64,000 nt of DNA from Ascidiella aspersa (Eukaryota): the NCBI GenBank assembly GCA_963924565.1, contig OZ004613.1, positions 24,800,001 to 24,864,000 of the forward strand. Reading direction: 5' to 3'. A program made the position numbers and the translations under genes. Of the stretch, positions 1,890 through 48,001 are shown in pieces (positions within the stretch are counted from its first letter, which is position 1; every line of letters starts with the position of its first letter). Under the pieces are notes generated by a model. It saw only the letters and a program-made list of their open reading frames with translations, did not search any database and had not been told where the DNA came from.

Positions 1890-4059
1890 GCGCAAACTAT
1901 AAAACTTCTTTAAGCTACAATCTACTTGAAAAAACACAATCCCAATCAACTGTTATTACGTAGTATAATGCATTGTTACAATCTGGCCAAGTTTTTCACT
2001 CATCCGTCAAAATGAAAGAATTACACTTTTAAAAACTAAAATAACAAAAACTTATTTTAGTTAAGTACAAACATTGATACCATCTTTTTTGTCATGATTT
2101 ATTAAGCTAATGCCTGCAATTAAGTTAGTATAAAAGTCAAGCAATAGCCCAATACAGCGGTTCCTAACCGGCGGGGAGGGGGGGGGGGGGGGTTCTCTAC
2201 TACATTATTTAACTTTTTTCAGTAATTTTTTGGTTTATTTCAGTTGGGCACCACTCCAACAGCTGTACAAACTCTGTTTTTTTGCCAACTTTCACATTAA
2301 AACTGCAAAAAAATTTCGTGTATATAACAGCCCGATTTAATTACATTTTTGCTAACTTATAGTTAAACGATAAAAGTAATCCCACTTTCGAACTATTTTT
2401 ATCCATGTTTGATAAATGATAACAGGCTAGCAACAGGGGAACTTTTTTGCGCGAATCTATAATGGCTTTGCAACATTTCCGTTGTATTGTGTGTCGTCAC
2501 ATCTTTTGAAAAACGATAACACAATGTTTAATTTTTGCGCTTGACATTTTTATTTGCGCTCGACATCATAGCCTTACAACTGTGGAGTATATGCTCTCAC
2601 AACACGTGTGTCAAAATAATCTCGATAAAAATCAAAGTGGAGAGCACGAGCAATTTGTTGTGAGCCCAATGCAAAAAGTCTCCTAATTTACAGTTTAGCA
2701 AATTTAACCAAACGAAACTTTAATTGTTTTCGCGCTTCGCGCAACCTACAATACACTTCAATGTGTCCAAGTTGTTTCAGTGATATTCAATTTAAATGCC
2801 GACCTGCTTTTTTTAGGGTGGCGCAAGACATAGGAAGATTACCAAAAAAGGCGCGGCTGATAAAAGGCGCGGCTGAAAAAAGGTCCGAAAACCGACCAGG
2901 CAAAGTAATTTCCAGCAAAACTCATATTATGCCAAATTGTCAATGTTATAATGATTTTACATTTAACTGAAAAACAGATTTCGAGTTTGTATGGATATAT
3001 TTAAATGCCGTTTTGGTGCCATGTCTCCCGCCTTGCCTACGATTTTAAATTATTCATATTTTTAGACAAAATTATTGATTTTAATTGCGTGTTGCGCAGT
3101 AATTTATTTTATGATCCTTCTTTTTGTTGTATTGGCCTTGAACGTCGTTTCCGACCGTTCTCCTGGTCATACGCCAGATTAAAACTTTGTTAATTAGTAA
3201 CCTGGGTCCTGGGTGCTAAGGTCTCTACAAGGTGGCGCGAACCCAGAATGCTTAGGAATCGCTGATGTAGATTTTACGTTATACTTAAAAACGACACATC
3301 TGTAAGAAACTCATTTATACCAATATGGTTTATTAAAGATGACGCAAAACAATCTGTAGAATGGCACATACAAGGTGATAAAATAATGTCGGCACCTTTC
3401 GGAAGCAGAAAGCCAAAGCCACAAGAAATCACGTCTTAAACTGCAAAGGAGGTAGGCAAAAGACAAAGATGGACTCGAATGTAACAGCGCTGATTCACAA
3501 ATCTAAATCATTAGACTTTTTTTGTCTCACAGGTCAACTTTGTGGTTGCAATGTCCACTTTGAAATCATTACCACGTCAAATTCGGGATGTACTACAGTA
3601 CGTGGTGGGTTCAATGAGCCTACAAGAATGCTCCAACCCTCATATCAACCTTAATCCATTGGTTAATCAAAATTTTTAATTATTCCCACCCCAATAATTG
3701 ATGACTCTTGTACTCTCATACATTTTTATCTTTTTTTTAAGGTATTGAGTCGAATGCCTTAGTTTGAAGTTATGTGTTTTATTTAAAATTTTATTATAAA
3801 TTTGAACTCTTTTATCTCAAGTTTTGGACTTAAAACGATTAGATTGTTGCATGAGGTTTTTTGGTATTTTTAGTTTAAAATTGCTTATTTAGACGACAAT
3901 TTTATTGGTTTAAAGTTTTATAATAATGATATATAAGTGGTTATAGGGGATGCCTTGCTTAATGACTTGGCTGACTCGGGCAATTTGATTTGACTTTGAC
4001 CAACCCGATTTAAAGCCTAAAGTCATCCTTAGGTAAACTGCTAAACCAACCAATGCCGT

Positions 4060-5850
4060 TAACTGTAGCATATTACTAAATCAACCCCTAATCGAACCTT
4101 TAACCCTAAATGAACTAATAATATTAAAAAACGAAAAACCTCAAACCACCTCTAGCTTAGCCCACAGTCTTAATCAATTTTAAATCTATAACTAAACCTG
4201 AACACTCCTAACCCAGCCACTGACAAAACCCTGACCAAAGCATGAACTATTCCTTTACCTACTCTAAAATAAATTTTCTCAACCTAAACAGTAATATATA
4301 GTCTACTTTATCTCACCATTTAATCTACCGTTAACCCGAGCAACTTCCTAAATCAAACATTTAGCCTATCCTTAATTGGATTACTCTATAAAACCCCAGC
4401 AAACTTTTAACCCTACCATTGCCTGAAATTTAACTGCCCCCCTAGCACAAACAGCTAACCTAAAAATAAACCGAAAACCCAACCAAATTCCTTATTGCAA
4501 ACCCTTATCTTAACCATATAGCTTAAATGGCTAAAAGTAACCCTACCTCAACCCGGCACCCATTGTTATCCCACCCCACCCCTTACTCTATCATTAAATA
4601 AATTCTGATCTTAATTACAAACTAATTTCTTATCCTATCCCTAACCTGAGCATTGACAACTCACCTAATTTTTAAACCCTAACCGTAAGCCTTACAATTA
4701 ACCTTAACTAAACCCGATAGCGAAATCCCTAACCTAATCATACACTAACTTAAATTTAGTAAATAATCTAATCATTTATCCTTAAATTTAACCCTTATGC
4801 AAAACCCTAAACTAACCTTAACTAAACCCAATAGCGAAACCCCCAATATGATAATAAACTCATGACCTTATCCCTAATGGAAAACCCTAACTAAACAGAT
4901 AGGAAACCCTTAACCTAATAATTATGCCATAATCTTAACCCTTAAGCAAAACTCTAAACTAACCTTAAATAAACCCGATAGCAAAAGCCCTAACCTAACC
5001 CTAGTGCAAAACCCTAAACTAACCCTAACTAAACCCGATAGCAAAAGCCCTAACCTAACCCTTGTGCAAAAGCCCTAACCTAACCCTTGTGCAAAACCCT
5101 AAACTAACCCTAACTAAACCCGATAGCAAAAGCCCTAACATAACCCTTGTGCAAAACCCTAAACTAACCCTAACTAAACCCGATAGCAAAAGCCCTAACC
5201 TAACCCTTGTGCAAAACCCTAAACCAACCCTAACTAAACCCGATAGCAAAAGCCCTAACCTAATAGTCAACCTCTAACCTAACCTTATAAAAACCCTAAA
5301 CCTACCCTTAAACAAATCTGATAGCGAAACCCTAACCTAAACCTTATGAAGACCCTAAACTAACCCCCTAACCTAATAATTAACCCCTAATCTAACCATA
5401 ATAAAAATCCTAAACTAACCTTAAATAAACCCGGTAGCGAAACCCCTAACTTAACACTTAACCCCTTACCTACACCCCTAACCTAATAATTAATCCCTTA
5501 CCTAATCCTTACGAAAACCCTAAACTAAACCTAACTAAACCCCTGAGCGTAACCCCTAACCTAATAATAACCCCCTAACATACCCCCCTAACCTAACCCT
5601 TATGAAAACCCTAAACTAACCCTAACTAAACCCCTGAGCGTAACCCCTAACCTAATAATAAACCCCTAACATACCCCCTAACCTAACCCTTATGAAAACC
5701 CTAAACTAACCCTAACTAAACCCCTGAGCGTAACCCCTAACCTAATAATAAACCCCTAACATACCCCCTAACCTAACCCCCTAACCTAACCCTTATGAAA
5801 ACCCTAAACTAACCCTAACTAAACCCCTGAGCGCCCCTAACCTAGTCCTA
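4060..5850 (+). repeat. CCCTAA-rich minisatellite (includes a 60-bp unit at ~4960-5270)
   Basis: Unit aacctaacccttgtgcaaaaccctaaactaaccctaactaaacccgatagcaaaagccct; strong A/C skew. Confidence 0.9.
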
Positions 5851-8376
5851 AAACTAAACTTTATTCACCAAATTGATATAGTAACCATGCAATTGCAACG
5901 GCCACTTACTGACAAACAGCCCCAACTCCACCACTCACCACAGTCGACATTGCGTGACAGTTAAAGCTACGAATGTAATAAACCTGCCGCAGCACCAAAC
6001 CCCAAACATCCACTTGCCGGCCCCTCTCCAGATTCCACAGCACGTCGAACGGATCAGCTACCTGACGAATGGCATGGTAACAAGGCGTCGGCATTGCATC
6101 TTTGGGAAATAGTCTGACAAAGCTCTTCGGCAAACAAAGAAGCAACATTTCCGGCGGAAGCGACATATCTGGCGAACAGAGCAGCAAGACGATGGAACAA
6201 ATCTTGAGGGTTTAAGCAAAATATCTCGTTGAACAGCTTACTGGCAAACAGCATGGCAAAATGCCAAATGGTGCAGTGACTTGGAAAACGGAATCACGAC
6301 ATGGCAAATTTAAATTAAGCATTTGTTGTTTTTGGAAAATGCCAAATGTTATATGATAGCTATAAGGTAAATGACAACAAGTTGCAGGGCGACGGAGTCG
6401 GAGTCGGGCTTGGGACTCCAGTAAAACTATGTATGGCAAGCCCCAAGGCCACAAACTGTAATTGTACAGGTGAAAAAAAAAGATACTGGAATATTTTTCA
6501 ACCAAGTTTTGTAGGTTGATTATAGATACGCTGTTTTAGACACGTAACGCTATTTTAGACACGTGCCGGACGCGGTGTCCGATGGATTTGATAAATTTGG
6601 ATAAAGTCGGACAGGAATTGTTTTGTTCGACTCCGCAGTCCTGACAAGTTGTTAAATGATAAAGCTATTTTAAAAAACAGTAAAAATGGCGAAGTTCTAA
6701 CAAGTAATTTCAAAACGACTGAAACTCAAGGTATTTGCAAAACTCGCTTTTTTTTGAGTTTTTTTCATAAAACATGACCTTGTCATTCCACAAAGAAATG
6801 TAATAAAATTTTGAAGTAAGTCGCAGTTAGGTAAATAAACACGAAAGACGAACCAAATGGCAAGCAAATTTTTCTGCGTGTAAACGTTGAGCTATAGCAC
6901 AATTTTAAGAAAATATATATTCAATTAAAATATTTATTTTAATGTTGAATCTGCAAATTTATTGCCGGAAATTTGTTTTCGGTCATTTGGTGATTTAGGA
7001 GTGCATGCTTTTTTAATAATTGTTTTTGATTTGGTAATATGTGGATGATTTTTAGGGGTTTAGGGATCTGCGCCTTTTGGATCTTTCAATTGGGGAAAAA
7101 CCTAATATTTAGTATTATTATTACGTTTGGGATCGTGACCAAGGTTTAAGTCTTTATTTTGGAAAGTCGTACATTTAGTTTTATTAAAAATTTACGTATA
7201 ATGGCCTCGTAGGCCTTTTGATATAGTTGGCAAACATATTTTTTGGGGAAAGGTTAGGCGAATTTTCTGGTGGTGAAGTTGCAGGGCTTAGTGGTGATTT
7301 GGTATAGAGGCTGTTAACACTTGTTAAAAAAATGATTTTTGGAGATAAAGAACATTTTTGTGGCATGGCAAGCATAGGATTGGGTTAGGGGAGGAAATAA
7401 TATGGAAAATATAATTTAATCTTTGAGAACATAAATTGGGAAATTTTATTGCAGGATTTACGGGCTATTTATATTAATAATAATTTAAATATTTAAAAGA
7501 CATTTATTAGAGTATGGATCCTTAATGTGACACCTGAGCAGGTTTTTGAAGATTTTTGGAATAAATGTAGGGTTTTTGGCGGAGGGTGAAAACCAAATAT
7601 TGAAATATACACTACATTATAATTTGGATAGTATGAGACAGGATTGAATTGGTGAGGAATATATTGTGGGATATAAATTTGTCAGTTTATTGTGGTAAGA
7701 AAATCAGAATTAACACAGAAAATCGCTGTCCATTTGATTTGTCGCTCTGTAAATTTGATAAAAAAGTTCAATTCTGCTTCGCTCGTTGCCAAAATCCAAA
7801 ATTTTGTTTTTCTTTCGCCATTTTCCTATATGGTAAAAATAATTTGTCCGACATTACAAAAATTTACTTCCATGTTATTCTGTAAGTCAATTTACCAAGC
7901 AGCTATCATATGTTAAAATGCTAGTTTACTATGGCGTCATTCCATTAGTCAAGATACTGTGTCATTCGAAATGTCACCATGTTGTTTGCCAATTAGCAGT
8001 CTACTCGACATTTTACTCGAATCCTAAAGATTCTGTTCCATTCGCCATGTTGCTGCTTTGCTCGCCAGGTGAAGTCGCTCCCACTGGATTTGTTGCTTCT
8101 GTATTTGCCAATGTAGCTTTGCCCCCAAAGATGCAATACCGATCGCCTTGTAACCATGACAAACGACAAGCAGCTATCCGTTCGATATGCTGTGAAAAAA
8201 GGAAAGGTGCCTTGACAAGCAGACGTTCGAGATCCAGTGCCCGCAGATCTAAAACAAACGCAGCCCTAACGCCACGCAATATCTTCCATGGTTCGTGGCA
8301 AAGTTAGGACTGCTCGCCAGTTAATGACCGCTTTAATCGCACGATTACTGTCAATTTAATGAACAAAGTCTAGTTT
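5851..8376 (-). ncRNA. Candidate long-hairpin RNA, inner stem, copy A
   Basis: Arms 5851-6360 and 7896-8376 are diverged inverted repeats with G-U-biased mismatches on the minus strand; putative intron 7895-6360; 1-2 nt indels argue against coding. Confidence 0.55.
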
Positions 8377-8389
8377 CTGGGTTGGGTGA

Positions 8390-10150
8390 CCCTAACCTAA
8401 CACCCCCTCCCCATATCCCAAGCCCTAACCCTAAACCAACCCCTAATCAAACCCCGAGACTAATCCCCAACTTAACCCTAAAACAAGCCCCTAACCTAAC
8501 TTAACCTAAACCCTAACCCAACCTTTAACCCAACCCCTAACCCAACCCCTAACCCAACCCCTAACCCACCCCCTAACCCACCCCTAACCCACCCCCTAAC
8601 CCACCCCTAACCCACCCCCTAACCAAACCCTTTACCCAACCTATAATACAACCCCTAAACAAACTTCTAACCCACCCCTAACCAACCCTTCACCCAACCC
8701 ATAGTGCAACCCCTAACCCTCCCTCTAACCCACCCCTAATCCTAGTCTAAACCTAACCCATAATACAACCCCTAACCCAACTTTTAACCCACCCCTAATC
8801 CTAGTCTAAACCTAACCCATAATACAACCCCTAACCCTACTTGTAACCCACCCCTAATCCTAGTCTAAACCTAACCCATAATAGAACCCCCAAGCCCACT
8901 TGTAACCCACCCCTAATCCTAGTCTAAACCTAACCCATAATACAACCCCTAACCCACTTGTAACCCACCCCTAATCCTAGTCTAAACCTAACCCATAATA
9001 GAACCCCCAACCCCACTTGTAACCCACCCCTAATCCTAGTCTAAACCTAACCCATAATACAACCCCTAACCAACTTCTAACCCACCCCTAATCCTAGTCT
9101 AAACCTAACCCATAATAGAACCCCCAACCCCACTTGTAACCCACCCCTAATCCTAGTCTAAACCTAACCCATAATACAACCCCTAACCCCACTTGTAACC
9201 CACCCCTAATCCTAGACTAAACCTAACCCATAATACAACCCCTAACCCAACTTCTAACCCACCCCCAATCCTAGTCTAAACCTAACCCATAATACAACCC
9301 CTAACCCCACTTGTAACCCACCCATAATCCTAGTCTAAACCTAACCCATAATAGAACCCTTAACCCAACTTCTAACCCACACTTAACCCTAGTCTGAACG
9401 AACCCGTAATACAACTCCTAACCCCACTTGTAACCCACCCCTAATCCTAGTTATAACCTAACCCATTTTACAACCCCTAACCCAACTTCTAACCCACAAT
9501 TAATCCTAGTCTAAACGAACCCGTAATACAACCCCTAACCCCACTTCTATCTTACCCCTAATCCTAGTTTTAACCTGACCCATTTTGCAACCCCTAACCC
9601 AACTTCTAACCCACTATTAATAAAACCTAACCCATAACACAAATCCCTAACTTAATTTTACCCGTAATCTTTAACACAAACACAAACTATATTTTAACCT
9701 TAACCCTTAACACAAACCCTAAATAAATTTTAATCCGTAAAACAAACTCAATTTAATTTAAACCTAACCCACACTACAACCCCCAACCCAACTTCTGACC
9801 CACACTTAAAAAAACCTAACCCATAACACAAACCCCTAACTAAATGTTTACCTTGTAACCTTTAACATTAACCCTAACTAAATTTTACCTCTAACCCTTA
9901 ACACAAACCCTAAATAAATTTTAATTTTTAAAACACAAACCCTAATTAAATTTAATTTAATCCTCAACACAAACCCTAACAAAATTTAAACCTTGTAACC
10001 TTTAACACAAACCCTAACTAAATTTTAACCTTGTAACCTTTAACACAAAGCTTAACTAAATTTTAACCCTAACCTTTAACACATACTTTAAATCACTTTT
10101 TATGAACTTGAAACCCTAACAAATTTTTACCCCACAATATTTCAAACCCA
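8390..10150 (+). repeat. CCCTAA-rich minisatellite (~59-bp unit at ~8740-9600)
   Basis: Unit aatcctagtctaaacctaacccataatacaacccctaaccccacttgtaacccacccct. Confidence 0.9.
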
Positions 10151-10969
10151 ATCCAAATATAACCTCTAAAATTGACAATAAATTTCTGAGCTAAAGTCCA
10201 AGGTTTAGTGGTTGGTTTAGCAATTTGTATAGGGATGCTTATTGTTAATTAGCAAACCCAATGCCCAATTCAACCCATATATTTCAACCCTTATACCAGC
10301 CCACACTAAACAAAGTTCCCACATAACCACTAAACCATATCAAAATGTACTTCTAACTCGTCCCTCCACTTCGAGCACTTCCATGGATCCCTTGGGGTAC
10401 GTGGGCTAGTTTTAGGGCCCCAAGAAGGCCTACTCAATTTTTTAGGTTGTTCAATTTTTAAATGGACAATTTTATTTTAAAAAGAGTTTAATTAAAACAA
10501 ACGTTTTGGGCCTTCTCCTTATAATGTATTTAGACTTAATTTAGGTTTGACATTTGTTGGACTGAGCCTACACCCTTCGTTACCCCCCATAATTCCGGAC
10601 TAAGCTTTGGAAACCCCGAATGCCAACCCCAGTAGCACACAGTTTACCTTATCTCTCAAGTTAAAGTACGCCTTGAACCCACAGATATAGCAATCCATTT
10701 GAGGCTGGATCCCCTGAAGCTGGATGAAAGGTTGCGAACGAAAGGCAACGCTGCTATTTCTCTAATGATTAAGTCTGTTTATCAGCACTGTTACATTAGA
10801 AGGCACCTTTGTCTTTGTGTACTTCCGATTACAGGCCAAAAGTGAAGTCTTGTCGGGGTTGCCTTTCTTATTCCCGACACAGCCTGCAAACATAGTCAGA
10901 ATTACTAGCGTGTTTGCTAAAACATTTTTTGGGAATAATGATTTAAAATGTTCGACAAAATCGTTAACC

Positions 10970-10975
10970 TTTATT
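10970..10975 (-). promoter_or_regulatory. Candidate polyadenylation signal AATAAA for gene copy A
   Basis: Minus-strand AATAAA ~210 nt after the stop codon; also present in copy B near 50833. Confidence 0.4.
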
Positions 10976-11184
10976 GTGCATTGAAGTCGTGAAATTGTGC
11001 ATACGTTACTAGAGGAAACTTTTTGTTTGTTCAATATATGACACTTCCGTCAAGCCTTAGGGGCCCGCCCGCAATTGTGTTGTGTTGGCCTTGGCTTGTT
11101 TGTTTAATGAACGACATACACCCAGTACACTATACAGCATTGGCTGACATAATACTTTATCATACTTTTTGTAGTTTTTACCAT

Positions 11185-14100
11185 TTAGATAGTTCTGCGA
11201 GGCGAACAGCAGCCGAAGCAGCACACCATCTTTCGAAAGAATGAAAGCGTTCTTCTTATAGGTCCTTTCTGTAAAAAAGTTAACAAGTAAATAAACGATG
11301 CCTACCTTTTATAAACAAATAAGTATTACAAACTAAAAAATTTTAAATTACTCATATAAAAGGCAAATTATTTTTGAAATAACTCAAACATAAAACATAA
11401 CTAAATTCTCAGAACTTAAAATTATTAAATTTAAAAAAATAATTGAAGTCCCTAACAATTTTCAGTTACGACCCAACAAATTGCTTTATAACGTTAAGTC
11501 CCAAAACAAGAATACGTAAGAAGTGCTCGCTCGTAACTGGTGTGCAAATATGCAACTATATACATATGTAGAGGTACTATAATCGAAAAAATGTTAAAAC
11601 TTAGATTTATTTGAAAAACTAGACCTCTGCCTGGACAGCCAACGTAAGGTGTAAATTTGAAATGACCAATGTTGAACTACAATTATCTAATTTGAAAAAC
11701 GGAAATAAAAGCAATCAAACAATCGCTGCCTGAGATAACAAAACAATGCCAAATAAATAAAATACGCCTGGCGAAATTAGGCAAAACACAAATAAATAAA
11801 TCAATATGATACGAGTTAAACAGATTTCAAACGAACATAACGAAAGAACGTTTTCAAAAATAGTTTTTGACAGATTTCATATGTGCATACTTTATTCTTT
11901 CTGGTAGAGGAAAGTGTTTTCTCAAATTGAAAATATACCATAAAACCCTACTCTCCTATACAAAATGTTTCTTCGTTTACCCATGATTACTGTTTTTATA
12001 TGAAAGTCTTTATGGCATTTGAATATCACGGTAACACAAGCTTAAAAATACAGGATTATTGCGAATGAATTTTTAGTGTTATAAATGTATGGGTAAGTGG
12101 GTTATAGTATAGATAGAGTATACCTTTTGCTTTTTTTGTGTGCCGGAATCGGCTGCTGTGGAGTTGTCGACGTAGACCGTTGCCGCACTGGCTTCGTTTG
12201 AAGCGGCAACGGCCACAGAATGGTTGGCGGCTTGAATTGATGCCGCATTAATGAAGGGGCTGCTCGGCCTCGGTATTATGGCCTGTTGTAGAGCAGCCCC
12301 TACGGTGAATGTAGCCAAATCTTGAAGTTCTTCCTCAAACTGTTAAAAAAGCACGTTAAACCTTAGCGGGATACCTGTGTTGAACAGATGTCTCTTAACC
12401 TGTATGCTACATTAGATTTAGAAAGTCGTTTTAGCGTAGTTCAAGGTCGATGGTTGCAGATATAAAAGCATATCCATTAATAAGGTAACGAAATGTTCGA
12501 GATAACTTCAAAGTTACTTACTGCTTCCTCGTCTGTCTCGGAGCCTTGTGGCGTTTCCGTCCCACTCGATGTTGTTTGCTACAAAGTATAACACAACGTT
12601 AAACAGGACAAAATGAATTCGTCTAGCATCTATTTTGATAGTTGCATATATGAAAGCGTATTTATCAATAGAAACAAGAAATACGTAGGCTAAGAAGTGC
12701 TCGCTTGTAACTGGTGTGCAAATATGCAACTATATGTATATAGAGGTACTATAATCGAAAAAATGATAAATCTTAAATTTATTTGAAAAACTAAACCTCG
12801 TATAACCCGCCTGGACAGCCAACGTAAGGTGTAAATTTTAATTGACCCATGTTGGACTACAATTATCTAATTTGAAAAACGGAAATAAAGGCCTTTCCAA
12901 CGAAAAACGAACATAGTTAAAAAACGTTTTCAAAAATAGTGTTTGACAGATTTCATATGTGCATACTTTATTCTTTCTGGTAGAGGAAAGTGTTTTCTCA
13001 AATTGACAATATACCATAAAACCCTAGTCTCCTATACAAAATGTTTCTTCGTTTACCCTTGATTACTGTTTTTATATGAAAGTCTTTATGGCATTTGAAT
13101 ATCACGGTAACACAAGCGTAAAAATACAGGATTATTGCGAATGAATTTATAGTGTTATAAATGCATGGGTAAGTGGGTTATAGTATAGAGTATACTTTTT
13201 GCTTTTTTTGTGAGCCGGAATCGGCTGCTGCGGAGTTGTCGACGTAGACCGTTGCCGCACTGGCTTCGTTTGAAGCGGCAACGGCCACTGAATGGTTGGC
13301 GGCTTGAATTGATGCCGCATTAATGAAGGGGATGCTCGGCCTCGGTATTATGGCCTGTTGTAGAGCAGCCCCTACGGTGAATGTAGCCAAATCTTGAAGT
13401 TCTTCCTCAAACTGTTAAAAAAGCACGTTAAACCTTAGCGGGATACCTGTGTTGAACAGATGTCTCTTAACCTGTATGCTACATTAGATTTAGAAAGTCG
13501 TTTTAGCGTAGTTCAAGGTCGATGGTTGCAGACATGAAAGCATATCCATTAATAGGTAACGAAATGTTCGAGATAACTTCAAAGTTACTTACTGCTTCCT
13601 CGTCTGTCTCGGAGCCTAGTGGCGTTTCCGTCCCACTCGATGTTGTTTGCTACAAAGTACAACACAACGTTAAACAGGACAAAATAAATTCCTCTAGCAT
13701 CTATTTTTCAGGTTTGCATTTCTTTGAACATAAAATTGGATTGTCGTTTTAGTCACTGCGTCACGTGAGCCATCCATACATCTATCGTTTGTAGAATTTT
13801 GCCAGAGTATTTTTATTGGCCACAATACAAAGATATTTTTGTTGGGTATGAAAAATATAAAAGTAACCAAGAAATTCAAAATTTTAATATAAAAACATCG
13901 TCATCATATTAAGTTATCAATTTACATGAATTAAGACTTAAATCGTTAAATTAAAATATTTATGTCAAACCATAAAGTCTGCTATTGGAGTTGTTTTATG
14001 AGTAAAAATAGTTTTCTATGAATACTGTTGTATTTCGGTTTCATGTGTTTCACTGTGGGGTTGTTTATTTTTTGTTAAATTGAAGTGTACAACATTCATA

Positions 14101-17100
14101 GCATAACAACTAACAAAAAACTCCTTTCACTTAAAATTATACAAATTTTTTTTTTTTGTTTTATTATAGTTAGTGTAAATTTATCTTTCACTTGAGATGG
14201 CTTAATTGAAGTAGATGACTCTTAATCTGTGTGTCACATTATATTCAGAAAGTGGTTTTAGGACGGTTTAATGTCCTTGATTTTAAAACATCACTTAGTT
14301 TGTTCGAATTGGCTATAAAGCTTGTAGGCTGTCACTAATTTTTTTCGCTTTTTTCTTCTCAAGTTTGTAAGAGTCACACTTTAACCACATAGACATACTG
14401 TTTCACACTTTTTTATGAACCAACATTGTTTTGACCTGTGGTATTTGAGTGAGCTTTAAACCAAAATGTTTGAGAGGTACTGTTGTAGAAAGTAAGTTAC
14501 TGTTTGACGGTTGCATATATGAAAGCGTATTTATTAATAGAAAAATAAGTGTTCGAGAAAATTTTCAAGTTACTTACTGCCTCATCTACTTCAGAGCCTT
14601 CTGTCGTTTCATTGTTGGGCGGTATTGTTTGCTTCAAGGTATAGCACTATGTTAGACAGGACAAAATGACATTTGTCAATTTTCTGTAATTACTTTTTAG
14701 TTTCCGGTAGCGCAAACTGGTTTGCATTTCTTTGAGACATAAAATTAAATTGTCGTTTTAGTCACAGCGTCACATAAGTTACAAAGACATCTCACGATCT
14801 TTGTGGAATTTTGCCAGAGTATTTTTATTGGCGACAAGCTAAAGATATTTTTGTTGGGTACGAAAAATATAAAATCAACGAAAAAATTCAAAGTTTGATT
14901 ATAAAAACATTGTCATCCTAATTGATCAATTTGCATGAACTAAGACTAAAATCGTTGAATTTTATTTATATCAAACAATAAAGTCTGCTAATAAAGTTGT
15001 TTTATTGGTAAAAATATATTTCTATAAAGATTTTGGTGTTGTTTGTTTTTTTGGTAAATTCAAGTGTACAATATACATAGCATAGCAATTAACGCACGTT
15101 TATGGCATGTAATAACCAAAATATAAGATGAAGAAGAATTGGAATCCTTTTTTTTTTCTTCACTTAAATTTACACAAATTTTTTGATTGATAATATTAAG
15201 TGTAAATTTATATTTCAATTGAAATTGTTTGAGGCAAACCGAAATAAAGATTTTGAAAAATAGGCGTTTAAACGTTCTCGCATAAATATTTTTAAACCGG
15301 GTGGTTTAAGTGGGTCAAACCATAATAAAACGTAAATTTTGACATTGCTTTTTTTAGTACATTTAAAAATAAGTTAGAATAATGATTCAAAAAATCTTCG
15401 ACAAAAATATATTTCTTTCGTTTACCCATAATTACTGTTTTTATAAGAGGTTCTTTACGACATTTATATTTTAACAGCTCAGGGTAACATAAGCTTTACA
15501 ATAAACGACTATTGCTAATAATTTATGGTGTTTTAAAAGTATGGGTAATTAAGTTATAGTATAGAGTATACCTTCGGGTGCTGTGATGATGGTGCGCAAT
15601 GGTCGACGTCGACCGGCGCCTCTGCAATTTCTTCCAAAGCGGCAAAGGCCGCGGGGTGGTCGACGTCGACCGGCGCCGCCCTCATCTCATCCAAAGCGGC
15701 AACTGCCGCGGAGTTGTCGGCGGCTGCGACTGATGCCGCCTCATCATAGGGGCTGCTCGGCCTCTGTATTGTGCGGGCCTCGCACAAGGTAGCCCCTACA
15801 ATGAAGGCGGCCAACTGGTCGCATGCCGCTTCCAATTCTTCCTCATTCTGTTAAAAATGCACTTATTAAACCTTTGCGGGACATGTGTATAGAACAGGTG
15901 GCTCTTAACCTGTGTGCTACATTAGATTCAAGAAAATATAAAGATTTTCATAGTTAAAATTAGCTGTTATCAATTTACAACTGTCTAAAAACTGTGGTAT
16001 CAGTAAAAGCATTTGTGTTTTGCAATAAAAAACTCTCAGTTTGCAATAAAAAACCCTGACCCGGCGAATTCACAGATCAAATTTTAAGAAGCTCCGCTCT
16101 ATACACTGTTCGCGTGTTGCAATGCTTACTTTTATACCTGCCTCACACTTTAAAAGTATTTGTATGGTTAAGTTACTTTTACATCACAGAAATGTAGTAA
16201 ACGTCCTAGCCGGTAGCAACTATTAGTTAGGCTTGCCGATAGTTTACTCGGTTTGACATCGAAAAATAAGCCACGCTTATAGTTAGCTGTTAGTTGTGTT
16301 TGAACCATACTTTGTTATAAATGACAAAATGAATTCCTCTAGCATCTATTTCTGTTGCTACTTTTCAGTTACCGGAAGCCCAACCAGGTTTGCATTTCTT
16401 TGAACATAAAATTGGATTGTCGTTTTAGTCACTGCGTCACGTGAGCCATCCATACATCTATCGTTTGTGGAATTTTGCCAGAGTATTTTTATTGGCCACA
16501 ATACAAAGATATTTTTGTTGGGTATGAAAAATATAAAAGTAACTAAGAAATTCAAAATTTTAATATAAAAACATCGTCAACATATTAAGTTATCAATTTA
16601 CATGAATTAAGACTTAAATCGTTAAATTAAAATATTTATGACAAACCATAAAGTCTGCTATTGGAGTTGTTTTATGAGTAAAAATAGTTTTCTATGAATA
16701 CTATTGTATTTCGGTTTCATTTGTTTCACTGTGGGGTTGTTTATTTTTTGTTAAATTGAAGTGTACAACATTCATAGCATAGCAACTAAAAAAAATCTCC
16801 TTTCACTTAAAATGATTCAACAAATTTTTTTTCTGTTTTATTATATTTAGTGTAACTTTATCTTTCAATTGAGATGGCTTAATTGAAGCAGATGGCTCTT
16901 AATCTGTGTGTCACATTATATTCAGAAAGTGGTTTTAGGACGGTTTAATGTCCTTGACTTTAAAACAGCACTTAGTTTGTTCGAATTGGCTATAAGCTTG
17001 TAGGCTGTCACTAATTTTTTTCGCTTTTTTCTTCTCAGGTTTGTAAGAGCCACACTTTAACCACATAGACATACTGTTTCACACTTTATGCCCAACATTG

Positions 17101-20100
17101 TTTTGACCTGTGGTATTTGAGTGAGCTTTAAACCAAAATGTTTGAGAGGTACTGTTGTAGAAAGTTTGTTACTGTTTGATGGTTGCATATATGAAAGCGT
17201 ATTTATTAATAGAAAAATAAGTGTTCGAGAAAATTTTCAAGTTACTTACTGCCTCATCTTCTTCAGAGCCTTCCGTCGTTTCATTGTTGGGCGGGATTGT
17301 TTGCTACAAGGTATAGCACTATGTTAGACAGGCCAAAATGACATTTGTAGCATCAATTTTCTGTAATTACTTTTTAGTTTCCGGTAGCGCAAACTGGTTT
17401 GCATTTCTTTGAGACATAAAATCAAATTGTCGTTTTAGTCACAGCGTCGCATAAGTTACAAAGACATCTCACTGTCTTTGTGGAATTTTGCCAGAGTATT
17501 TTTATTGGCGACAAGCTAAAGATGTTTTTGTTGGGTACGAAAAATATAAAATCAACGAAAAAATTCAAAATTTGATTATAAAAACATTGTCATCCAAATT
17601 GATCAATTTGCATGAACTAAGACTAAAATCGTTAAATTTTATTTATATCAAACAATAAAGTCTGCTAATAAAGTTGTTTTATTGGTAAAAATATATTTCT
17701 ATAAAGATTTTGGTGTTGTTTGTTTTTTTGGTAAATTCAAGTGTACAATATACATAGCATAGCAATTAACACACGTTTATGGCATGTAATAACCAAAATA
17801 TAAGATGAAGAAGAATTGGAATCCTTTTTTTTTCTTCACTTAAATTTACACAAATTTTTTGATTTATAATATTAAGTGTAAATTTATATTTCAATTGAAA
17901 TTGTTTGAGGCAAACCGAAATAAAGATTTTGAAAAATAGGCGTTTAAACGTTCTCGCATAAATATTTTTAAACCGGGTGGTTTAAGTGGGTCAAACCATA
18001 ATAAAACATAATATTTGACATTGCGTTTTTTAGTACATTTAAAAATAAGTTAGAATAATGATTCAAAAAATCTTCGACAAAAATATATTTCTTTCGTTTA
18101 CCCATATATACTGTTTTTTATAAGAGGTTCTTTACGACATTTATATTTTAACAGCTATATATCAGGGTAACATAAGCTTTACAATAAACGACTATTGCTA
18201 ATAATTTATGGTGTTTTAAAAGTATGGGTAATTGAGTTATAGTATAGAGTATACCTTCGGGTGCTGTGATGATGGTGCGCAATGGTCGACGTCGACCGGC
18301 GCCTCTGCAATTTCTTCCAAAGCGGCAAAGGCCGCGGGGTGGTCGACGTCGACCGGCGCCGCCCTTATCTCATCCAAAGCGGCAACTGCCGCGGAGTTGT
18401 CGGCGGCTGCAACTGATGCCGCCTCATCATAGGGGCTGCTCGGCCTCTGTATTGTGCGGGCCTCGCACAAGGTAGCCCCTACAATGAAGGCGGCCAACTG
18501 GTCGCATGCCGCTTCCAATTCTTCCTCATTCTGTTAAAAATGCACTTATTAAACCTTTGCGGGACACGTGTATAGAAAGGTGGCTCTTAACCTGTGTGCT
18601 ACATTAGATTCAGAAGAAAATATAAGACTTTCATAGTTAAAATTAGCTGTTATCAATTCACAACTGTCTAAAAACTGTGGTATCAGTAAAAGCATTTGTG
18701 TTTTGCAATAAAAATCTCTCAGTTTGCAATAAAAAACCCTGAACCTGCGAATTCACAGATCAAATTTTAAGAAGCTCCGCCCTATACACTGTTCGCTTGT
18801 TACAATGCTTACTTTTATACCTGCCTCACACTTTAAAAGTATTGTGTATGGTAAAGTTACTTTTACATCACAGAAATGTAGTATACGTCCTAGCCGGTAG
18901 CAACTATTAGTTAGGCTTGCCGATAGTTTACTCGGTTTGACATCGAAAAATAAGCCATGCTTATAATTAGCTGTTAGTTGTGTTTGAACTATACTTTTTA
19001 CAACCAGGTTTTGATAACTTTTTTTAGCATTATCTGACATGGCTGTGTGTTAAAAATGTACTTTATTTGTGCCAGGGCTGTTGAGTCGTTTAAAAATGAA
19101 CCCCGCAGTCCACTCCCGAGTCCAGAGTCCCGCTAAAATATGCGATTATCATCAAGTTCCGAACCTGGATTCGACCCTAAAGTCCATATTCCACCCATTT
19201 ACGCATCTGAAATAAGAATGATATTGTCTAATCCACTCATATAATATAATTCATTCATAAAAAATTCATGGTTTGAAAATATTCGACCATAAATTAGTCT
19301 ATATCTTTACAGTCAACAGTTTGCGGCCTTATTAGTTTCAAAATTCGGCACGGCGCATGCGCACGTAAGACTCGGGACTCGCGTAAGACTCGGGACTCCA
19401 GCAAAATAATCCGACTCCGTCGAGTTCCGTTTTACCAGTCCAGAGTCGAACTCCGGCTTTTAACCCTGGTTTGTGCATGGGGTTGATCCAACTACTAACT
19501 TTAGGTTAATAAATGATTTAAAGTGTGAATCTCATTTACGTATACGTACAGTAAAACATGTTAACGAAAAGCAAACCCCAAAATATCGTTATTTTTATGA
19601 CGCTTTCCATATAGCCGCCATATAGTTGTTGGGACCCTTGGTATTACTCAAATATTTATAAAAGTTTTGTTCTTAATTTGTTAACGTTATGTAAACACTC
19701 TGCAGGTAAAGAAAAAATAAAACTTTAATCAAAAGGTAATATATGCTTGTTCCAGCAAAATTAACTACAATGCGTCGGACACAGTTTGCAATTTACGCAT
19801 ACCAAATACAACGGTAAAGTTCTACCAAGATAGCCTAATCAAACCAAATAAGCTATCTTTTTGCTTTCGAGGGGTACGTGGCGTACTGAGCACTGAGCAC
19901 AGATAAAAAATGTACATTGCTTGATATATTGACGTTTATTAAGTTGTGGGGCGCCTAGACTCAAAAGTTACGATTAAAATACGCAAAACTTCGTAAAAAA
20001 CCTTACAATGTTTTCAGTGTTAACAAACAGTCGGTATTTCATTCATATTTTAAAGACGGAATACTTTCGACCGAAAACATTTTCCGTGTTAGTATTTAAG

Positions 20101-24084: not shown

Positions 24085-24605
24085 CTCTTAAACTGCCTTC
24101 AAAATGNNNNNNNNNNNNNNNNNNNNNNNNNNNNNNNNNNNNNNNNNNNNNNNNNNNNNNNNNNNNNNNNNNNNNNNNNNNNNNNNNNNNNNNNNNNNNN
24201 NNNNNNNNNNNNNNNNNNNNNNNNNNNNNNNNNNNNNNNNNNNNNNNNNNNNNNNNNNNNNNNNNNNNNNNNNNNNNNNNNNNNNNNNNNNNNNNNNNNN
24301 NNNNNNNNNNNNNNNNNNNNNNNNNNNNNNNNNNNNNNNNNNNNNNNNNNNNNNNNNNNNNNNNNNNNNNNNNNCTAAGTCTAACCATAACTAACATTAA
24401 CTCTAACCTAAAATGTGCACACATTTTGAAGGCATTTTTAGGGCATTTCAAAAATGTGCGCACATTGTTAAAAAAGTGCGCCGATATTTGAAAGCAGTTC
24501 AAAATGTGCGCACAATTGTTAAAAAAGTGCGCACATTTTTGAAGGCAGTCAAAAATAAGCGCACATTGTTGAAGGAATGTGCGCACTTTTTTGAAGGCAG
24601 TTTAA
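24085..24605. repeat. Palindromic AAATGTGCGCACATTT tandem repeat element spanning the gap
   Basis: Inverted ends AAACTGCCTTCAAAA / TTTTGAAGGCAGTTT. Confidence 0.6.
24107..24373. other. Assembly gap (N run)
   Basis: Run of n characters. Confidence 1.
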
Positions 24606-35800: not shown

Positions 35801-36463
35801 GTTCTTATTTTTTTGGATTAGCGTGCTTATATTGTGTTTTAGCAGATGGTAACCCTGCCTATAAAGCAAGCGTAACTAAAGCGCAATGATTTAAAATACT
35901 ATATATTTGCAAGAAAACGGCATAAAAAACTAAACAAACAGTGATATCTACGCCGTAGTCGGCACGCAGTAAAAAACAGTGTATTCACAATGCAATAAAC
36001 GAAATATTGTGCAATAAAACATTAGTTAGGATCTGATATCTAACAATTTTTTTGTAAGCAAGCCTTTCAATTTGAAATATCAAGGAATAAATTACCATAT
36101 TTGTGCGAAAACGGAGTAAAAAGGGACTGTTGTCCAGTTCCAATAAAAAAAGTGAATGATCAATATTCACTACAAAAAATAAATATTTGTTGTTTTTTAT
36201 TAGGCCATACCATTTTTAGATGCAAGAAGGCTCATACGACCCAAACGAGGATACGATCTCGCATAGCTGGCCAGAACACGTAAGGTTTAATTCGTAACTA
36301 TAATAATGCACTTAACGCTAGAATATTGGGATATTTTTATCCATTTTAATAAGATAACAACATAAAGAAACTAAATACGCAGTAATATGATTGATATCTA
36401 CGATTTAGTTGGCACACAGCAAAAAAACGATGTATTGAACCATGCCTTAAACGACATATTGTG
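32271..36463 (+). repeat. 2097-bp tandem direct duplication
   Basis: 32271-34367 is nearly identical to 34368-36463; ORF track entries repeat at +2097. Confidence 0.95.
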
Positions 36464-38513: not shown

Positions 38514-38620
38514 TTGTATTATGATATGATACTGGCGATCCCCTTCGTTATGAAGCTGCTTGTACTAACAGATTGAGCAAGCATTGACGTATGGTTGTTT
38601 CTCGACTCGTTCCCTTCTGA

Positions 38621-38695
38621 GCCTGCATAGCTCAGTTGGTAGAGCGACGGTCCCGGCTTGACCGGAGGTCGTGAGTTCGAACCTCACTGCAGGCT
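38621..38695 (+). tRNA. tRNA-like sequence (pseudo-tRNA or SINE head), isotype unassignable
   Basis: Acceptor GCCTGCA/TGCAGGC, D arm GCTC/GAGC with A box, T arm GTGAG-TTCGAAC-CTCAC. The anticodon arm is 2 nt too long and its loop CCGGCTT lacks U33. Confidence 0.65.
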
Positions 38696-45464: not shown

Positions 45465-48001
45465 AAACTAAACTTTATTCACCAAATTGATATAGTAACC
45501 ATGCAATTGCAACGGCCACTCACTGACAAACAGCCCCAACTCCACCACTCACCACAGTCGACATTGCGCGACAGTTAAAGCTACGAATGTAATAAACCTG
45601 CCGCAGCACCAAACCTCAAACATCCACTTGCCGGCCCCTCTCCAGATTTCACAGCACGTCGAACGGATCAGCTACCTGACGAATGGCATGGTAACAAGGC
45701 GTCGGCATTGCATCTTCGGGAAATAGTCTGACAAAGCTCTTTGGCAAATAAAAAAGCAACATTTCCGGCGGAAGCGACATATCTGGCGAACAGAGCAGCA
45801 AGACGATGGAACAAATCTTGAGGGTTTAAGCAAAATATCTCGTTGAACAGCTTACTGGCAAACAGCATGGCAAAATGCCAAATGGTGCAGTGACTTGGAA
45901 AACAGAATCACGACATGGCAAATTTAAATTAAGCATTTGCTGTTTTTGGAAAATGCCAAATGTTATATCATAGCTATAAGGTAAATGGACAACAAGTTGC
46001 AGGGCGACGGAGTCGGAGTCGGGCTTGGGACTTCAGTAAAACTATGTATGGCAAGTCCCAAGGCCACAAACTGAAATTGTACAGGTGAAAAAAAAGATAC
46101 TGGAATATTTTTCAACCACGTTTTGTAGGTTGATTATAGATACGCTATTTTAGACACGTAAATCGGCGAAAAACAGGCTGTACAGGCGCAGCCGGACGCG
46201 GTGTCCGATGGATTTGATCAATTTGGATAAAGTCGGACAGGAATTGTTTTGTTCGACTCCGCAGTCCTGACAAGTTGTTAAATGATAAAGCTATTTTAAT
46301 AAACAGTAAAAATGGCGAAGTTCTGACAAGTAATTTCAAAACGACTGAAACTCAAGTTATTTGCAAAACTCGCTTTTTTGAGTTTTTTTTATAAAACATG
46401 ACCTTGTCATTCCCCAAAGAAATGGAATAAAATTTTGAAGTAAGTCGCAGTTAGGTAAATAAACACGAAAGACGAATCAAATGGCAAGCAAATTTTTCTG
46501 CGTGTAAACGTTGAGCTATAGCACAATTTCAAGAAAATATAGATTCAATTAAAATATTTATTTTGATGTTGAATCTGCAAATTTATTGCCGGAAATTTGT
46601 TTTCGGTCATTTGGTGATTTAGGAGTGCATGCTTTTTTAATAATTGTTTTTGATTTGGTGATATGTGGATGATTTTTAGGGGTTTAGGGGTCTGCGCCTT
46701 TTGGATCTTTCAATTGGGGAAAAACCTAATATTTAGTATTATTATTACGTTTGGGATCGTGACCAAGGTTTAAGTCTTTATTTTGGAAAGTCGTACATCT
46801 AGTTTTATTAAAAATTTACGTATAATGGCCTCGTAGGCCTTTTGATATAGTTGGCAAACATATTTTTTGGGGGAAGGTTAGGCGAATTTTCTGGTGGTGA
46901 AGTTGCAGGGCTTAGTGGTGATTTGGTATAGAGGCTGTTAACACTTGTTAAAAAAAATGATTTTTGGAGATAAAGAATATTTTTGTGGCATGGCAAGCAT
47001 AGGATTGGGTTAGGGGAGGAAATAATATGGAAAATATAATTTAATCTTTGAGAACATAAATTGGGAAATTTTATTGCAAGATTTACGGGCTTTTTATATC
47101 AATAATAATTTAAATATTTAACAGACATTTATTAGAGTATGGATCCTTAATGTGACACCTGAGCAGGTTTTTGAAGATTTTGGGAATAAATGTAGGGTTT
47201 TTGGCGGAGGGTGAAAATCAAATATTGAAATATACACTACATTATAATTTGGATAGTATGAGACAGGATTGAATTGGTGAGGAATATATTGTGGGATATA
47301 AATTTGTCAGTTTATTGTGGTAAGAAAATCATAATTAACATAGAAAATCGCTGTCCATTTGATTTGTCGCTCTGTAAATTTGATAAAAAAGTTCAATTCT
47401 GCTTCGCTCGTTGCCAAAATCCAAAATTTTGTTTTTCTTTCGCCATTTTCCTATATGGTAAAAATAATTTGTCCGACATTACAAAAATTTACTTCCATGT
47501 TATTCTGTAAGTCAATTTACCAAGCAGCTATCATATGTTAAAATGCTAGTTTACTATGGCGTCATTCCATTAGTCAAGATACTGTGTCATTCGAAATGTC
47601 ACCATGTTGTTTGCCAATTAGCAGTCTACTCGACATTTTACTCGAATCCTAAAGATTCTGTTCCATTCGCCATGTTGCTGCTTTGCTCGCCAGGTGAAGT
47701 CGCTCCCACTGGATTTGTTGCTTCTGTATTTGCCAATGTAGCTTTGCCCCCAAAGATGCAATACCGATCGCCTTGTAACCATGACAAACGACAAGCAGCT
47801 ATCCGTTCGATATGCTGTGAAAAAAGGAAAGGTGCCTTGACAAGCAGACGTTCGAGATCCAGTGCCCGCAGATCTAAAACAAACGCAGCCCTAACGCCAC
47901 GCAATATCTTCCATGGTTCGTGGCAAAGTTAGGACTGCTCGCCAGTTAATGACCGCTTTAATCGCACGATTACTGTCAATTTAATGAACAAAGTCTAGTT
48001 T
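45465..48001 (-). ncRNA. Candidate long-hairpin RNA, inner stem, copy B
   Basis: Near-identical to copy A; putative intron 47520-45974 keeps GTAAAT and TTATAG. Confidence 0.55.

What the first reader, a model, noticed from the sequence alone, without database searches (positions are those of the whole stretch)
5851..8376. Long diverged hairpin with mismatches that are G-U wobble pairs on one strand only
Seen: 5851-6360 aligns to the reverse complement of 7896-8376. In the first ~165 aligned nt I count about 38 transitions of type left C/right-revcomp T or left A/right-revcomp G, against 1 in the opposite direction. These are G-U pairs in a minus-strand RNA and A-C mismatches in a plus-strand RNA; many of the transversions are U-U. 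Neutral decay of transposon TIRs should give roughly 50:50. Established: one-sided G-U enrichment marks selected RNA duplexes such as Drosophila hpRNA endo-siRNA precursors. Inference: a ~450-500 bp structured non-coding RNA gene, present twice (copy B 45465-48001).
Basis: partly seen in the sequence, partly recalled or inferred. Interest (0 to 1): 0.9.

Follow-up and report, generated by a model that had tools for sequence, protein, structure and literature searches.

The report
Wobble-rich long hairpin RNA gene candidate
A 480-bp inverted repeat split by an intron-like spacer evolves the way a double-stranded RNA read from the minus strand would, so it is probably a long hairpin RNA attached to an amplified gene family, but no expression data could be obtained.

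Summary
Window 5851-6340 aligns to the reverse complement of 7890-8376 at about 70% identity. Transition mismatches are strongly one-sided: 60 give G-U on the minus strand and 17 on the plus strand (p 9e-7). In the outer 200 nt the count is 40 against 3.

It is not a transposon. There are only five copies, all on one chromosome, and each lies downstream of one copy of a tandem-exon gene and in the same orientation.

The best new evidence comes from comparing the five copies:
- The right arm is almost invariant.
- The left arm takes transitions at the neutral rate but almost no transversions and no indels.
- The spacer and flanks change freely.

This is a base-pairing constraint. Other inverted repeats of equal divergence in the window have symmetric transitions. 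No deaminase sequence context and no regional strand skew was found. Minus-strand splice signals sit exactly at the stem tip, and an AATAAA sits at the stem's 3' end.

My reading is a selected minus-strand hairpin RNA, possibly the 3' end of the neighbouring gene, at about 0.58 confidence.

First readers noted this same stretch under three other headings. The scan has not reported it on other DNA.

The parts
7896..8376 (-). Right arm. It would be the 5' arm of the proposed minus-strand hairpin RNA. Its sequence is nearly invariant among the five copies, with no variable site in 7974-8321.
   Evidence: Observed 4 transitions, 0 transversions and 0 indels in 481 nt, against about 15 and about 14 expected from neutral neighbours (P 8.5e-4 and 1e-6).
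6360..7895 (-). Spacer, a putative intron on the minus strand. The 5' splice site is CTTG|GTAAAT (last exon base 7896). The 3' splice site is TTGTTGTCATTTACCTTATAG|C (first exon base 6359). The spacer evolves freely.
   Evidence: Among the copies there are 87 variable sites and 15 indel events in 1510 nt. The splice signals are kept in all five copies, except that copy C has a 1-nt insertion in the 5' splice site.
5851..6359 (-). Left arm. It would be the 3' arm of the proposed hairpin RNA. It carries most of the wobble-making changes and is A+C-rich on the plus strand in its outer 200 nt.
   Evidence: Among the copies: 16 transitions (16.1 expected), 3 transversions (14.6 expected, P 3e-4) and 0 indels (4.8 expected, P 0.008).
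5860..5865 (-). AATAAA on the minus strand, at the 3' end of the left arm. It and the roughly 30 nt downstream of it are identical in all five copies.
4000..5850 (.). Left telomere-like minisatellite, rich in the CCCTAA motif on the plus strand. Repeat units are 60, 85, 90 and 110 nt.
8390..10121 (.). Right telomere-like minisatellite, also C-rich on the plus strand, so it is in direct and not inverted orientation. Repeat units are 12, 59, 117 and 176 nt.
3308..3614 (.). Outer left relic of a larger old palindrome. It pairs weakly with 10673-10944 and evolves neutrally among the copies.
   Evidence: 10 transitions, 8 transversions, and a 68-nt deletion in copy A.
10673..10944 (.). Outer right relic of the old palindrome.
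45465..48001 (-). Copy B of the whole hairpin. Its right arm is identical to that of copy A, its left arm differs at 11 sites, and its spacer differs by about 2.5% plus indels.
12125..18530 (-). Upstream gene of tandem exons, in the same orientation as the hairpin. Its last recognisable exon ends in a phase-0 5' splice site, AAG|GTATAC, near 12125, and so needs an acceptor further downstream, towards the hairpin.

Best explanation
The locus encodes a long hairpin RNA read from the minus strand.

Proposed transcript: it runs through the right arm, from 8376 down to 7896. It loses the 1.5-kb spacer as an intron (7895 to 6360). It continues through the left arm, from 6359 down to about 5850, and ends after an AATAAA. 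The spliced RNA would fold into a duplex of about 480 bp closed by a 10-bp perfect stem and a 5-nt loop.

Origin: the hairpin arose from an old tail-to-tail inverted duplication of the 3' end of a tandem-exon gene. It has since been amplified together with that gene.

Selection: the right arm is held at the level of its sequence. The left arm is held only at the level of pairing, so it has drifted to wobble partners. This leaves the DNA arms about 70% identical while the RNA is 81% paired overall (WC plus minus-strand G-U over all 503 alignment columns) and about 88% paired in the basal 200 bp.

Likely role: a double-stranded RNA that regulates the co-amplified gene family, by Dicer processing into endogenous small interfering RNAs or by binding double-stranded-RNA proteins.

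What is shown: the pairing-type constraint, the asymmetry and the anatomy. What is inferred: transcription, strand, splicing and the downstream pathway.
For: 1. One-sided wobble pairs. There are 60 against 17 overall and 40 against 3 in the outer 200 nt. The predicted duplex energy is -571 kcal/mol with 406 pairs on the minus strand, against -392 kcal/mol with 347 pairs on the plus strand. Randomising the direction of each transition gives a difference of -12.5 +/- 29.5; the observed difference is -175.

2. Five-copy comparison, corrected for base composition and with columns near gaps masked.
- Left arm: transitions 16 against 16.1 expected; transversions 3 against 14.6 (P 3e-4); indels 0 against 4.8 expected (P 0.008).
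- Right arm: transitions 4 against 15.0; transversions 0 against 13.9.
The result holds after removing dense-variation blocks.

3. Recent transitions lean the same way: 9 compatible with minus-strand pairing and 3 not, against 7.3 and 6.6 expected; p 0.10.

4. Controls.
- Other inverted matches of equal divergence in the window have symmetric transitions and a transition-to-transversion ratio below 1. The hairpin has 75 to 39.
- The outer relic repeat evolves neutrally.
- The loop (A+C 44.6%) and non-satellite flanks show no A+C skew.
- The local mutation spectrum predicts that C-to-T would be the commonest change in the left arm, yet T/C pairs are the rarest class (rates, counts).

5. No sequence-context signature. 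There is no depletion of G 5' of the changed base, as ADAR editing would give, and no TC, CC or CpG enrichment, as APOBEC or methyl-CpG deamination would give.

6. Anatomy. Minus-strand GT and AG signals lie exactly at the stem tip, and AATAAA lies at the stem's 3' end; all are conserved in the copies.

7. Gene context. The hairpin is co-oriented with an upstream gene whose last exon needs a downstream acceptor.

8. Not coding as far as can be told. No reading frame in either arm has relatives or looks protein-like. The left-arm variable sites show no three-base periodicity.
Against: - There is no RNA evidence of any kind.
- The wobble excess forms a gradient that falls away from the left satellite. 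Pure pairing selection does not predict a gradient.
- The inner third of the stem has symmetric mismatches and is only about 65-75% paired.
- The splice-like signals are nearly symmetric on the two strands, because they lie inside the repeat.
- The strand-specific signal among recent changes is not significant on its own (p 0.10).
- No trans target with extended complementarity exists elsewhere in the genome.
- The five copies share ancestry, so the comparison covers a short evolutionary span in one genome.
Confidence: 0.58

Rival explanations
1. This is a decaying inverted duplication with no RNA function. A past strand-specific deamination of the minus strand changed C to T and A to G near the left satellite. 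One way this could happen is exposure as single-stranded DNA at a resected or telomere-healed break. That event would have produced the one-sided transitions. The right arm would be conserved for an unrelated reason.
For: - The A+C content falls smoothly from the satellite (0.77) through the left arm (0.69, 0.60, 0.58, 0.54, 0.46), while the right boundary is abrupt.
- The bias is limited to the 200-250 nt nearest the satellite.
- Both satellites have the orientation expected of telomere repeats added to a left-facing end.
- The outer relic repeat shows a weak bias in the same direction: 6 to 3 in the BLAST core and 17 to 5 in a gappy extension.
Against: - It needs two different deaminations at equal and near-saturating intensity. 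T-to-C hit about 33% of eligible sites and G-to-A about 42%. The reverse changes hit only 2-4%.
- No sequence context was found.
- The equivalent flank of the right satellite (10150 onwards) and the other satellite boundaries show no gradient.
- Recent changes in the outer left arm run mostly the other way, C-to-T.
- It does not explain why the left arm has lost transversions and indels but not transitions among recent copies.
Confidence: 0.2
2. The two arms are homologous terminal exons or untranslated regions of two convergent paralogous genes: the minus-strand tandem-exon gene and a diverged plus-strand paralogue to the left. Each arm is constrained for its own gene. The resemblance to a hairpin is a by-product of a tail-to-tail gene duplication.
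For: - Diverged paralogues on the opposite strand point at hairpins A, B and C. They lie just left of the window, at window 37529-37867, and at 24447819-24448532 on the contig.
- The tandem exons of these paralogues are about 64% identical in protein, which fits arms that are 70% identical in DNA.
- The outer relic repeat shows that the duplicated block was once larger.
Against: - No such paralogue was found beside copies D and E, yet their left arms are equally constrained.
- No reading frame spans the left arm, and its variable sites have no codon periodicity.
- Both arms would be sense strands, so transcription-linked mutation bias would act on them alike and could not give 60 against 17.
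- Independent constraints do not predict that the tolerated changes are exactly those that keep G-U pairs on one strand.
Confidence: 0.14
3. It is a transposon with long terminal inverted repeats, or a foldback element.
For: - The element has long inverted termini around a non-coding interior.
- Short dispersed repeats occur inside the spacer.
Against: - There are only five copies. All sit inside two local segmental-duplication clusters on one contig, with homologous flanks that extend for kilobases.
- There is no target-site duplication at 5851 and 8376.
- There is no transposase reading frame.
- The arm divergence is one-sided, and the right arms are invariant.
Confidence: 0.03

Closest known systems
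Drosophila hairpin-RNA (hpRNA) endogenous siRNA loci, such as hp-Nmy, hp-tHMG and hp88 (PMC10317233, PMC10292708)
   Same: - It is a long inverted repeat inside a single transcription unit, born by inverted duplication of gene sequence.
- Those loci can be spliced, can lie in the 3' part of an existing transcript, and can be amplified in tandem clusters together with paralogues of the related gene (passages read).
   Different: - The Drosophila loci are young, with near-perfect arms, and have identifiable trans targets. They are defined by Dicer-2-dependent small RNAs.
- Here the DNA arms are old, with 30% divergence. Pairing is kept through wobble pairs, one arm is frozen, no trans target was found, and no small-RNA data exist.
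Engineered G:U hairpin transgenes and intron-spliced hairpin constructs in plants (PMC9263138; Smith et al. 2000, cited there)
   Same: - One arm is kept exact while the other is changed by transitions, so the DNA is no longer a good palindrome but the RNA still pairs through 18-26% G-U. Here the figure is about 20% in the basal 200 bp.
- An intron sits exactly in the loop.
   Different: - Those are man-made, and only C is changed to T in one arm. Here both C-to-U and A-to-G equivalents occur.
- This is an analogy of design, not a family relationship.
- Whether wobble pairs were favoured here or merely tolerated is unknown.
Young plant microRNA and siRNA hairpins formed by inverted duplication of the target gene
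   Same: A hairpin that starts as an inverted gene fragment and then decays except where pairing matters.
   Different: - That is a plant pathway.
- Those hairpins shrink towards a single microRNA duplex, whereas this one keeps about 480 bp.
Inverted-repeat double-stranded structures in 3' untranslated regions, such as inverted Alu pairs (recalled from memory)
   Same: A long intramolecular duplex at the 3' end of a messenger RNA. It can be edited, can retain the RNA in the nucleus, or can be bound by double-stranded-RNA proteins.
   Different: Those are built from dispersed repeats and are not conserved at the pair level. This one is locus-specific and under pairing constraint.

Membership tests
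hpRNA / endogenous siRNA hairpin locus | Long inverted repeat able to form a duplex of hundreds of base pairs within one strand | tested here: met
   406 predicted intermolecular pairs and -571 kcal/mol on the minus strand.
hpRNA / endogenous siRNA hairpin locus | Single-stranded primary transcript that spans both arms | not testable with these tools
The only support is indirect: splice and poly(A) signals, and co-orientation with the upstream gene.
hpRNA / endogenous siRNA hairpin locus | Dicer-dependent small RNAs of about 21-23 nt from both arms | not testable with these tools
   No small-RNA data could be reached.
hpRNA / endogenous siRNA hairpin locus | Target gene with extended complementarity to one arm | tested here: not met
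   Genome searches with each arm found only the five hairpin copies, plus one 54-nt match at 83% on another contig. Only transcripts of the locus itself could match perfectly.
hpRNA / endogenous siRNA hairpin locus | Evolutionary constraint on pairing and not on coding | tested here: met
Terminal-inverted-repeat or foldback transposon | Many dispersed copies with target-site duplications | tested here: not met
Terminal-inverted-repeat or foldback transposon | Transposase gene, or membership of a family that has one | tested here: not met
Rfam RNA families | Match to a curated covariance model | tested here: not met
   no match at E up to 1 in 5700-8500.
Hyper-edited or hypermutated retrocopy (ADAR or APOBEC footprint) | Neighbour preference at the changed sites | tested here: not met
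   G 5' of the changed base is 33% at changed sites against 22% at unchanged sites, the opposite of ADAR. There is no TC, CC or CpG enrichment.

The most novel reading that the evidence does not exclude
Selection may have actively favoured wobble-making transitions in one arm. That would break the DNA palindrome, avoiding cruciform breakage, recombination or self-silencing, while keeping a long double-stranded RNA with an intron exactly in its loop.

This would be a natural counterpart of the engineered G:U, intron-split hairpin design. Here it would be built into the 3' end of a tandemly amplified, fast-changing gene family that it regulates, possibly as part of a genetic conflict.
Probability: 0.15. 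Interest if true: 0.8.

Novelty: new variant of a known kind. Interest (0 to 1): 0.6.

Why it matters
If it is transcribed, this would be an old hairpin RNA gene kept by RNA-level selection, in an animal outside the fly and mouse models.

Its evolutionary signature can be read from one genome alone: one arm frozen, the other drifting only through wobble partners. That combination could serve as a general in-silico screen for functional long hairpins, and it tells which strand is used.

It would also give a natural test of the idea behind engineered G:U hairpins, namely that weakening the DNA palindrome stabilises a double-stranded-RNA source.

Tried and rejected
- Transposon reading: rejected on copy number and context.
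- Regional or transcription-linked strand bias: rejected. The loop is G+T-rich on the plus strand, non-satellite flanks are unskewed, and recent loop changes show no consistent direction.
- ADAR, APOBEC and CpG context: none found.
- Coding arms:
  - The plus-strand frame of 129 codons (7918-8307) has no Pfam match, no homologue and a low protein-likeness score.
  - The minus-strand frame of 96 codons gave only two spurious hits, inflated by tandem repeats in the subject proteins.
  - The exact sequence is not in the protein collection.
  - No relative was found in metagenome contigs.
- Rfam: nothing.
- Parent or target gene elsewhere in the genome: none. The 54-nt match on contig 3 does not extend.
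- The bacterial-type promoter and terminator scan is irrelevant for an animal genome.
- Outer repeat as part of one long hairpin: it evolves neutrally, with transversions and a 68-nt indel, so it is a relic.
- Organism identity: not established. A mitochondrial cox1 piece gave only a generic animal answer.
- First cofold script: timed out. I replaced it with RNAduplex on the two arms as separate strands.
- Spliced model: I did not build or search the joined model.

Full report
**The observation**

The window comes from a 308-Mb animal genome (contig C7, 24,800,001-24,864,000). A local alignment of 5851-6340 with the reverse complement of 7890-8376 gives 349 identities, 77 transitions, 48 transversions and 29 gap columns.

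I write each mismatch as (left-arm base, base in the reverse-complemented right arm). The transitions are C/T 31 and A/G 29, against T/C 5 and G/A 12. The first two classes are G-U pairs in a minus-strand RNA and A-C mismatches in a plus-strand RNA. The split is 60 to 17 (p 9e-7).

The bias is regional: 40 to 3 in 5851-6050, 14 to 5 in 6051-6250, and none in the innermost 100 nt.

I folded the arms as two separate strands. The predicted duplex is -571 kcal/mol with 406 pairs on the minus strand, and -392 kcal/mol with 347 pairs on the plus strand. Randomising the direction of each transition gives a difference of -12.5 +/- 29.5, against -175 observed. I did not build or search the joined, spliced model.

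**What it is not**

- Each arm finds only five hairpin copies in the genome, all on C7. Two are in this window, 40 kb apart. Three are at 24.38-24.44 Mb, 28 kb apart and in the opposite orientation.
- Homology between copies runs for kilobases on both sides. There is no target-site duplication and no transposase. So this is a locally amplified segment, not a mobile element.
- Rfam has no match.
- The right arm holds long open frames on both strands, 129 and 96 codons. Neither has a Pfam match or a credible homologue. The plus-strand frame scores low for protein-likeness, and the two hits for the minus-strand frame are artefacts of tandem repeats in the subject proteins.

**Is the bias mutational?**

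It is absent. The spacer is 44.6% A+C, which makes it G+T-rich on the plus strand, and the non-satellite flanks are unskewed.
- Polarised recent changes in the spacer show no consistent strand direction.
- Eight other inverted matches in the same window, 400-680 nt long and 71-76% identical, have symmetric transitions and more transversions than transitions. The hairpin has 75 transitions to 39 transversions.
- The changed sites show no neighbour preference of the ADAR, APOBEC or CpG kind.
- Rates measured on the five copies make C-to-T the commonest local change. Yet T/C pairs, which a C-to-T change in the left arm would create, are the rarest class.
- At positions where a wobble partner is available, 33-42% of outer-arm sites have switched. 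Where it is not available, only 2-4% have.

One feature does favour a mutational contribution. The A+C content of the left arm falls as a smooth gradient away from the left telomere-like satellite, while the right boundary is abrupt. A past exposure of the minus strand as single-stranded DNA next to that satellite could give such a gradient. It would, however, need two kinds of deamination at equal, near-saturating intensity.

**The five-copy test**

This is the main new result. I aligned the five copies and used the spacer plus the unique flank 10150-11500 as a neutral reference: 2843 nt, 82 transitions, 93 transversions and 27 indel events. Expectations were corrected for base composition, and columns near gaps were masked.

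| Region | Transitions (observed / expected) | Transversions (observed / expected) | Indel events (observed / expected) |
|---|---|---|---|
| Left arm | 16 / 16.1 | 3 / 14.6 (P 3e-4) | 0 / 4.8 (P 0.008) |
| Right arm | 4 / 15.0 (P 8.5e-4) | 0 / 13.9 (P 1e-6) | 0 / not computed |

- No site varies in 7974-8321 of the right arm.
- The result survives removal of dense-variation blocks.
- The left-arm variable sites show no three-base periodicity, and no frame spans the arm, so the constraint is not a coding one.
- A sequence that accepts transitions freely but rejects transversions and indels is behaving as one strand of a duplex.
- Among the recent transitions at pairable sites, 9 keep or restore minus-strand pairs and 3 break them, against 7.3 and 6.6 expected. 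The direction is right but p is 0.10.
- The weak outer inverted repeat (3308-3614 with 10673-10944) evolves neutrally, with 10 transitions, 8 transversions and a 68-nt indel. It serves as an internal control and marks the remains of a once larger palindrome.

**Anatomy**

- On the minus strand the right arm ends in CTTG|GTAAAT, with 7896 as the last exon base.
- The left arm is preceded by TTGTTGTCATTTACCTTATAG|C, with 6359 as the first exon base.
- Removing 7895-6360 would leave a 10-bp perfect stem and a 5-nt loop, as another first-reader note suggested (s1-801790). I checked this by reading the sequence.
- These signals are conserved in the copies, apart from a 1-nt insertion in the 5' splice site of copy C. 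Because they lie inside the repeat, similar signals exist on the plus strand, so they are weak evidence for strand.
- An AATAAA sits on the minus strand at 5865-5860, at the very end of the left arm. The plus-strand counterpart in the right arm reads AACAAA.
- Both arms abut telomere-like minisatellites that are C-rich on the plus strand. They are therefore direct, not inverted.

**Context**

Upstream on the minus strand lies a gene of tandem, phase-0 exons. Each exon ends in AAG|GTATAC. The last one, near 12125, therefore needs an acceptor further downstream, in the direction of the hairpin.

This gene family is confined to the same two clusters on C7. Every hairpin copy sits downstream of one gene copy and in the same orientation. 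Diverged paralogues on the opposite strand converge on hairpins A, B and C but were not found beside D and E. This fits an origin by tail-to-tail duplication of the gene's 3' end, followed by loss of one partner while the inverted arm was kept.

**Most likely mechanism**

A minus-strand transcript, possibly the 3' terminal exons of the tandem-exon gene, folds after splicing into an imperfect duplex of about 480 bp.

- The right arm is held at the sequence level. It may be the strand that has to match something, or it may have a second function.
- The left arm is held only for pairing.
- The duplex probably feeds an RNA-interference-type pathway or binds double-stranded-RNA proteins and regulates the amplified family.

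The constraint and the asymmetry are shown. Transcription, strand, splicing and pathway are inferred. I put 0.58 on a selected minus-strand RNA duplex, and about half of that on a small-RNA-producing hairpin specifically.

**Comparison with what is known**

The nearest natural kind is the Drosophila hpRNA. Those loci also arise by inverted duplication of gene sequence, can be spliced, can sit in the 3' part of existing transcripts, and can be amplified in clusters with related genes (PMC10317233). They are young, near-perfect, have trans targets, and are defined by Dicer-2-dependent small RNAs. None of that could be met or tested here, and no trans target was found.

The nearest design analogue is the engineered G:U hairpin with an intron in the loop. 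There one arm is changed by transitions, so the DNA palindrome is broken but the RNA still pairs through 18-26% G-U (PMC9263138).

I could not confirm from the papers I read that one-sided G-U enrichment is an established mark of fly hpRNAs.

**Limits**

- The organism was not identified.
- All comparative evidence comes from paralogous copies within one genome.
- First readers noted the same stretch under three other headings (s1-801790, s1-801914 and s1-802530). The scan has not reported this element on other DNA.

Noticed in passing
window 12125-18530 (-), 51964-57944 (-); G000 C7 24.37-24.45 Mb: A family of genes built from tandem, phase-0 exons of about 280 nt, each with TTTTTAACAG|AAT at the start and AAG|GTATAC at the end. 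Exon numbers differ between copies. The family is confined to two clusters on one chromosome, plus a distant relative at 21.239 Mb.
   Followed up: partly
window 4000-5850 and 8390-10121: Two telomere-like (CCCTAA-derived) minisatellites with different higher-order units flank the hairpin at symmetric positions but in direct orientation. Their orientation is the one expected of telomere repeats added to a left-facing DNA end.
   Followed up: partly
window 3308-3614 and 10673-10944: A weak outer inverted repeat (about 73% identity in a 117-nt core) lies symmetrically about 2.2-2.3 kb outside each arm. It evolves neutrally among the copies, and copy A has a 68-nt deletion at about 3517.
   Followed up: yes
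window 6385-6433 and 6445-6520: Two short stretches of the spacer match dispersed repeats of about 45-75 nt on many chromosomes (78-90% identity). They are probably fragments of a small mobile element.
   Followed up: no
window 20212-20851, 33814-34289, 35911-37296, 59605-60244: A repeated block of about 650 nt is present in both orientations at about 72-76% identity, with symmetric transitions. I used it as a control.
   Followed up: partly
window 38620-38696 (+): A tRNA-Ala gene with anticodon GGC (ARAGORN; Rfam 55 bits) lies between a diverged paralogue of the tandem-exon gene and hairpin copy B.
   Followed up: no
window 24107-24374: A run of 268 N. I left it untouched.
   Followed up: no
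G000 C75:23317-24654 and C7:30046519-30046731: A mitochondrial contig of at least 26 kb carries cox1, with two TGA codons read as Trp. A short cox1-like fragment lies on chromosome contig C7 and is probably a nuclear mitochondrial insert.
   Followed up: no
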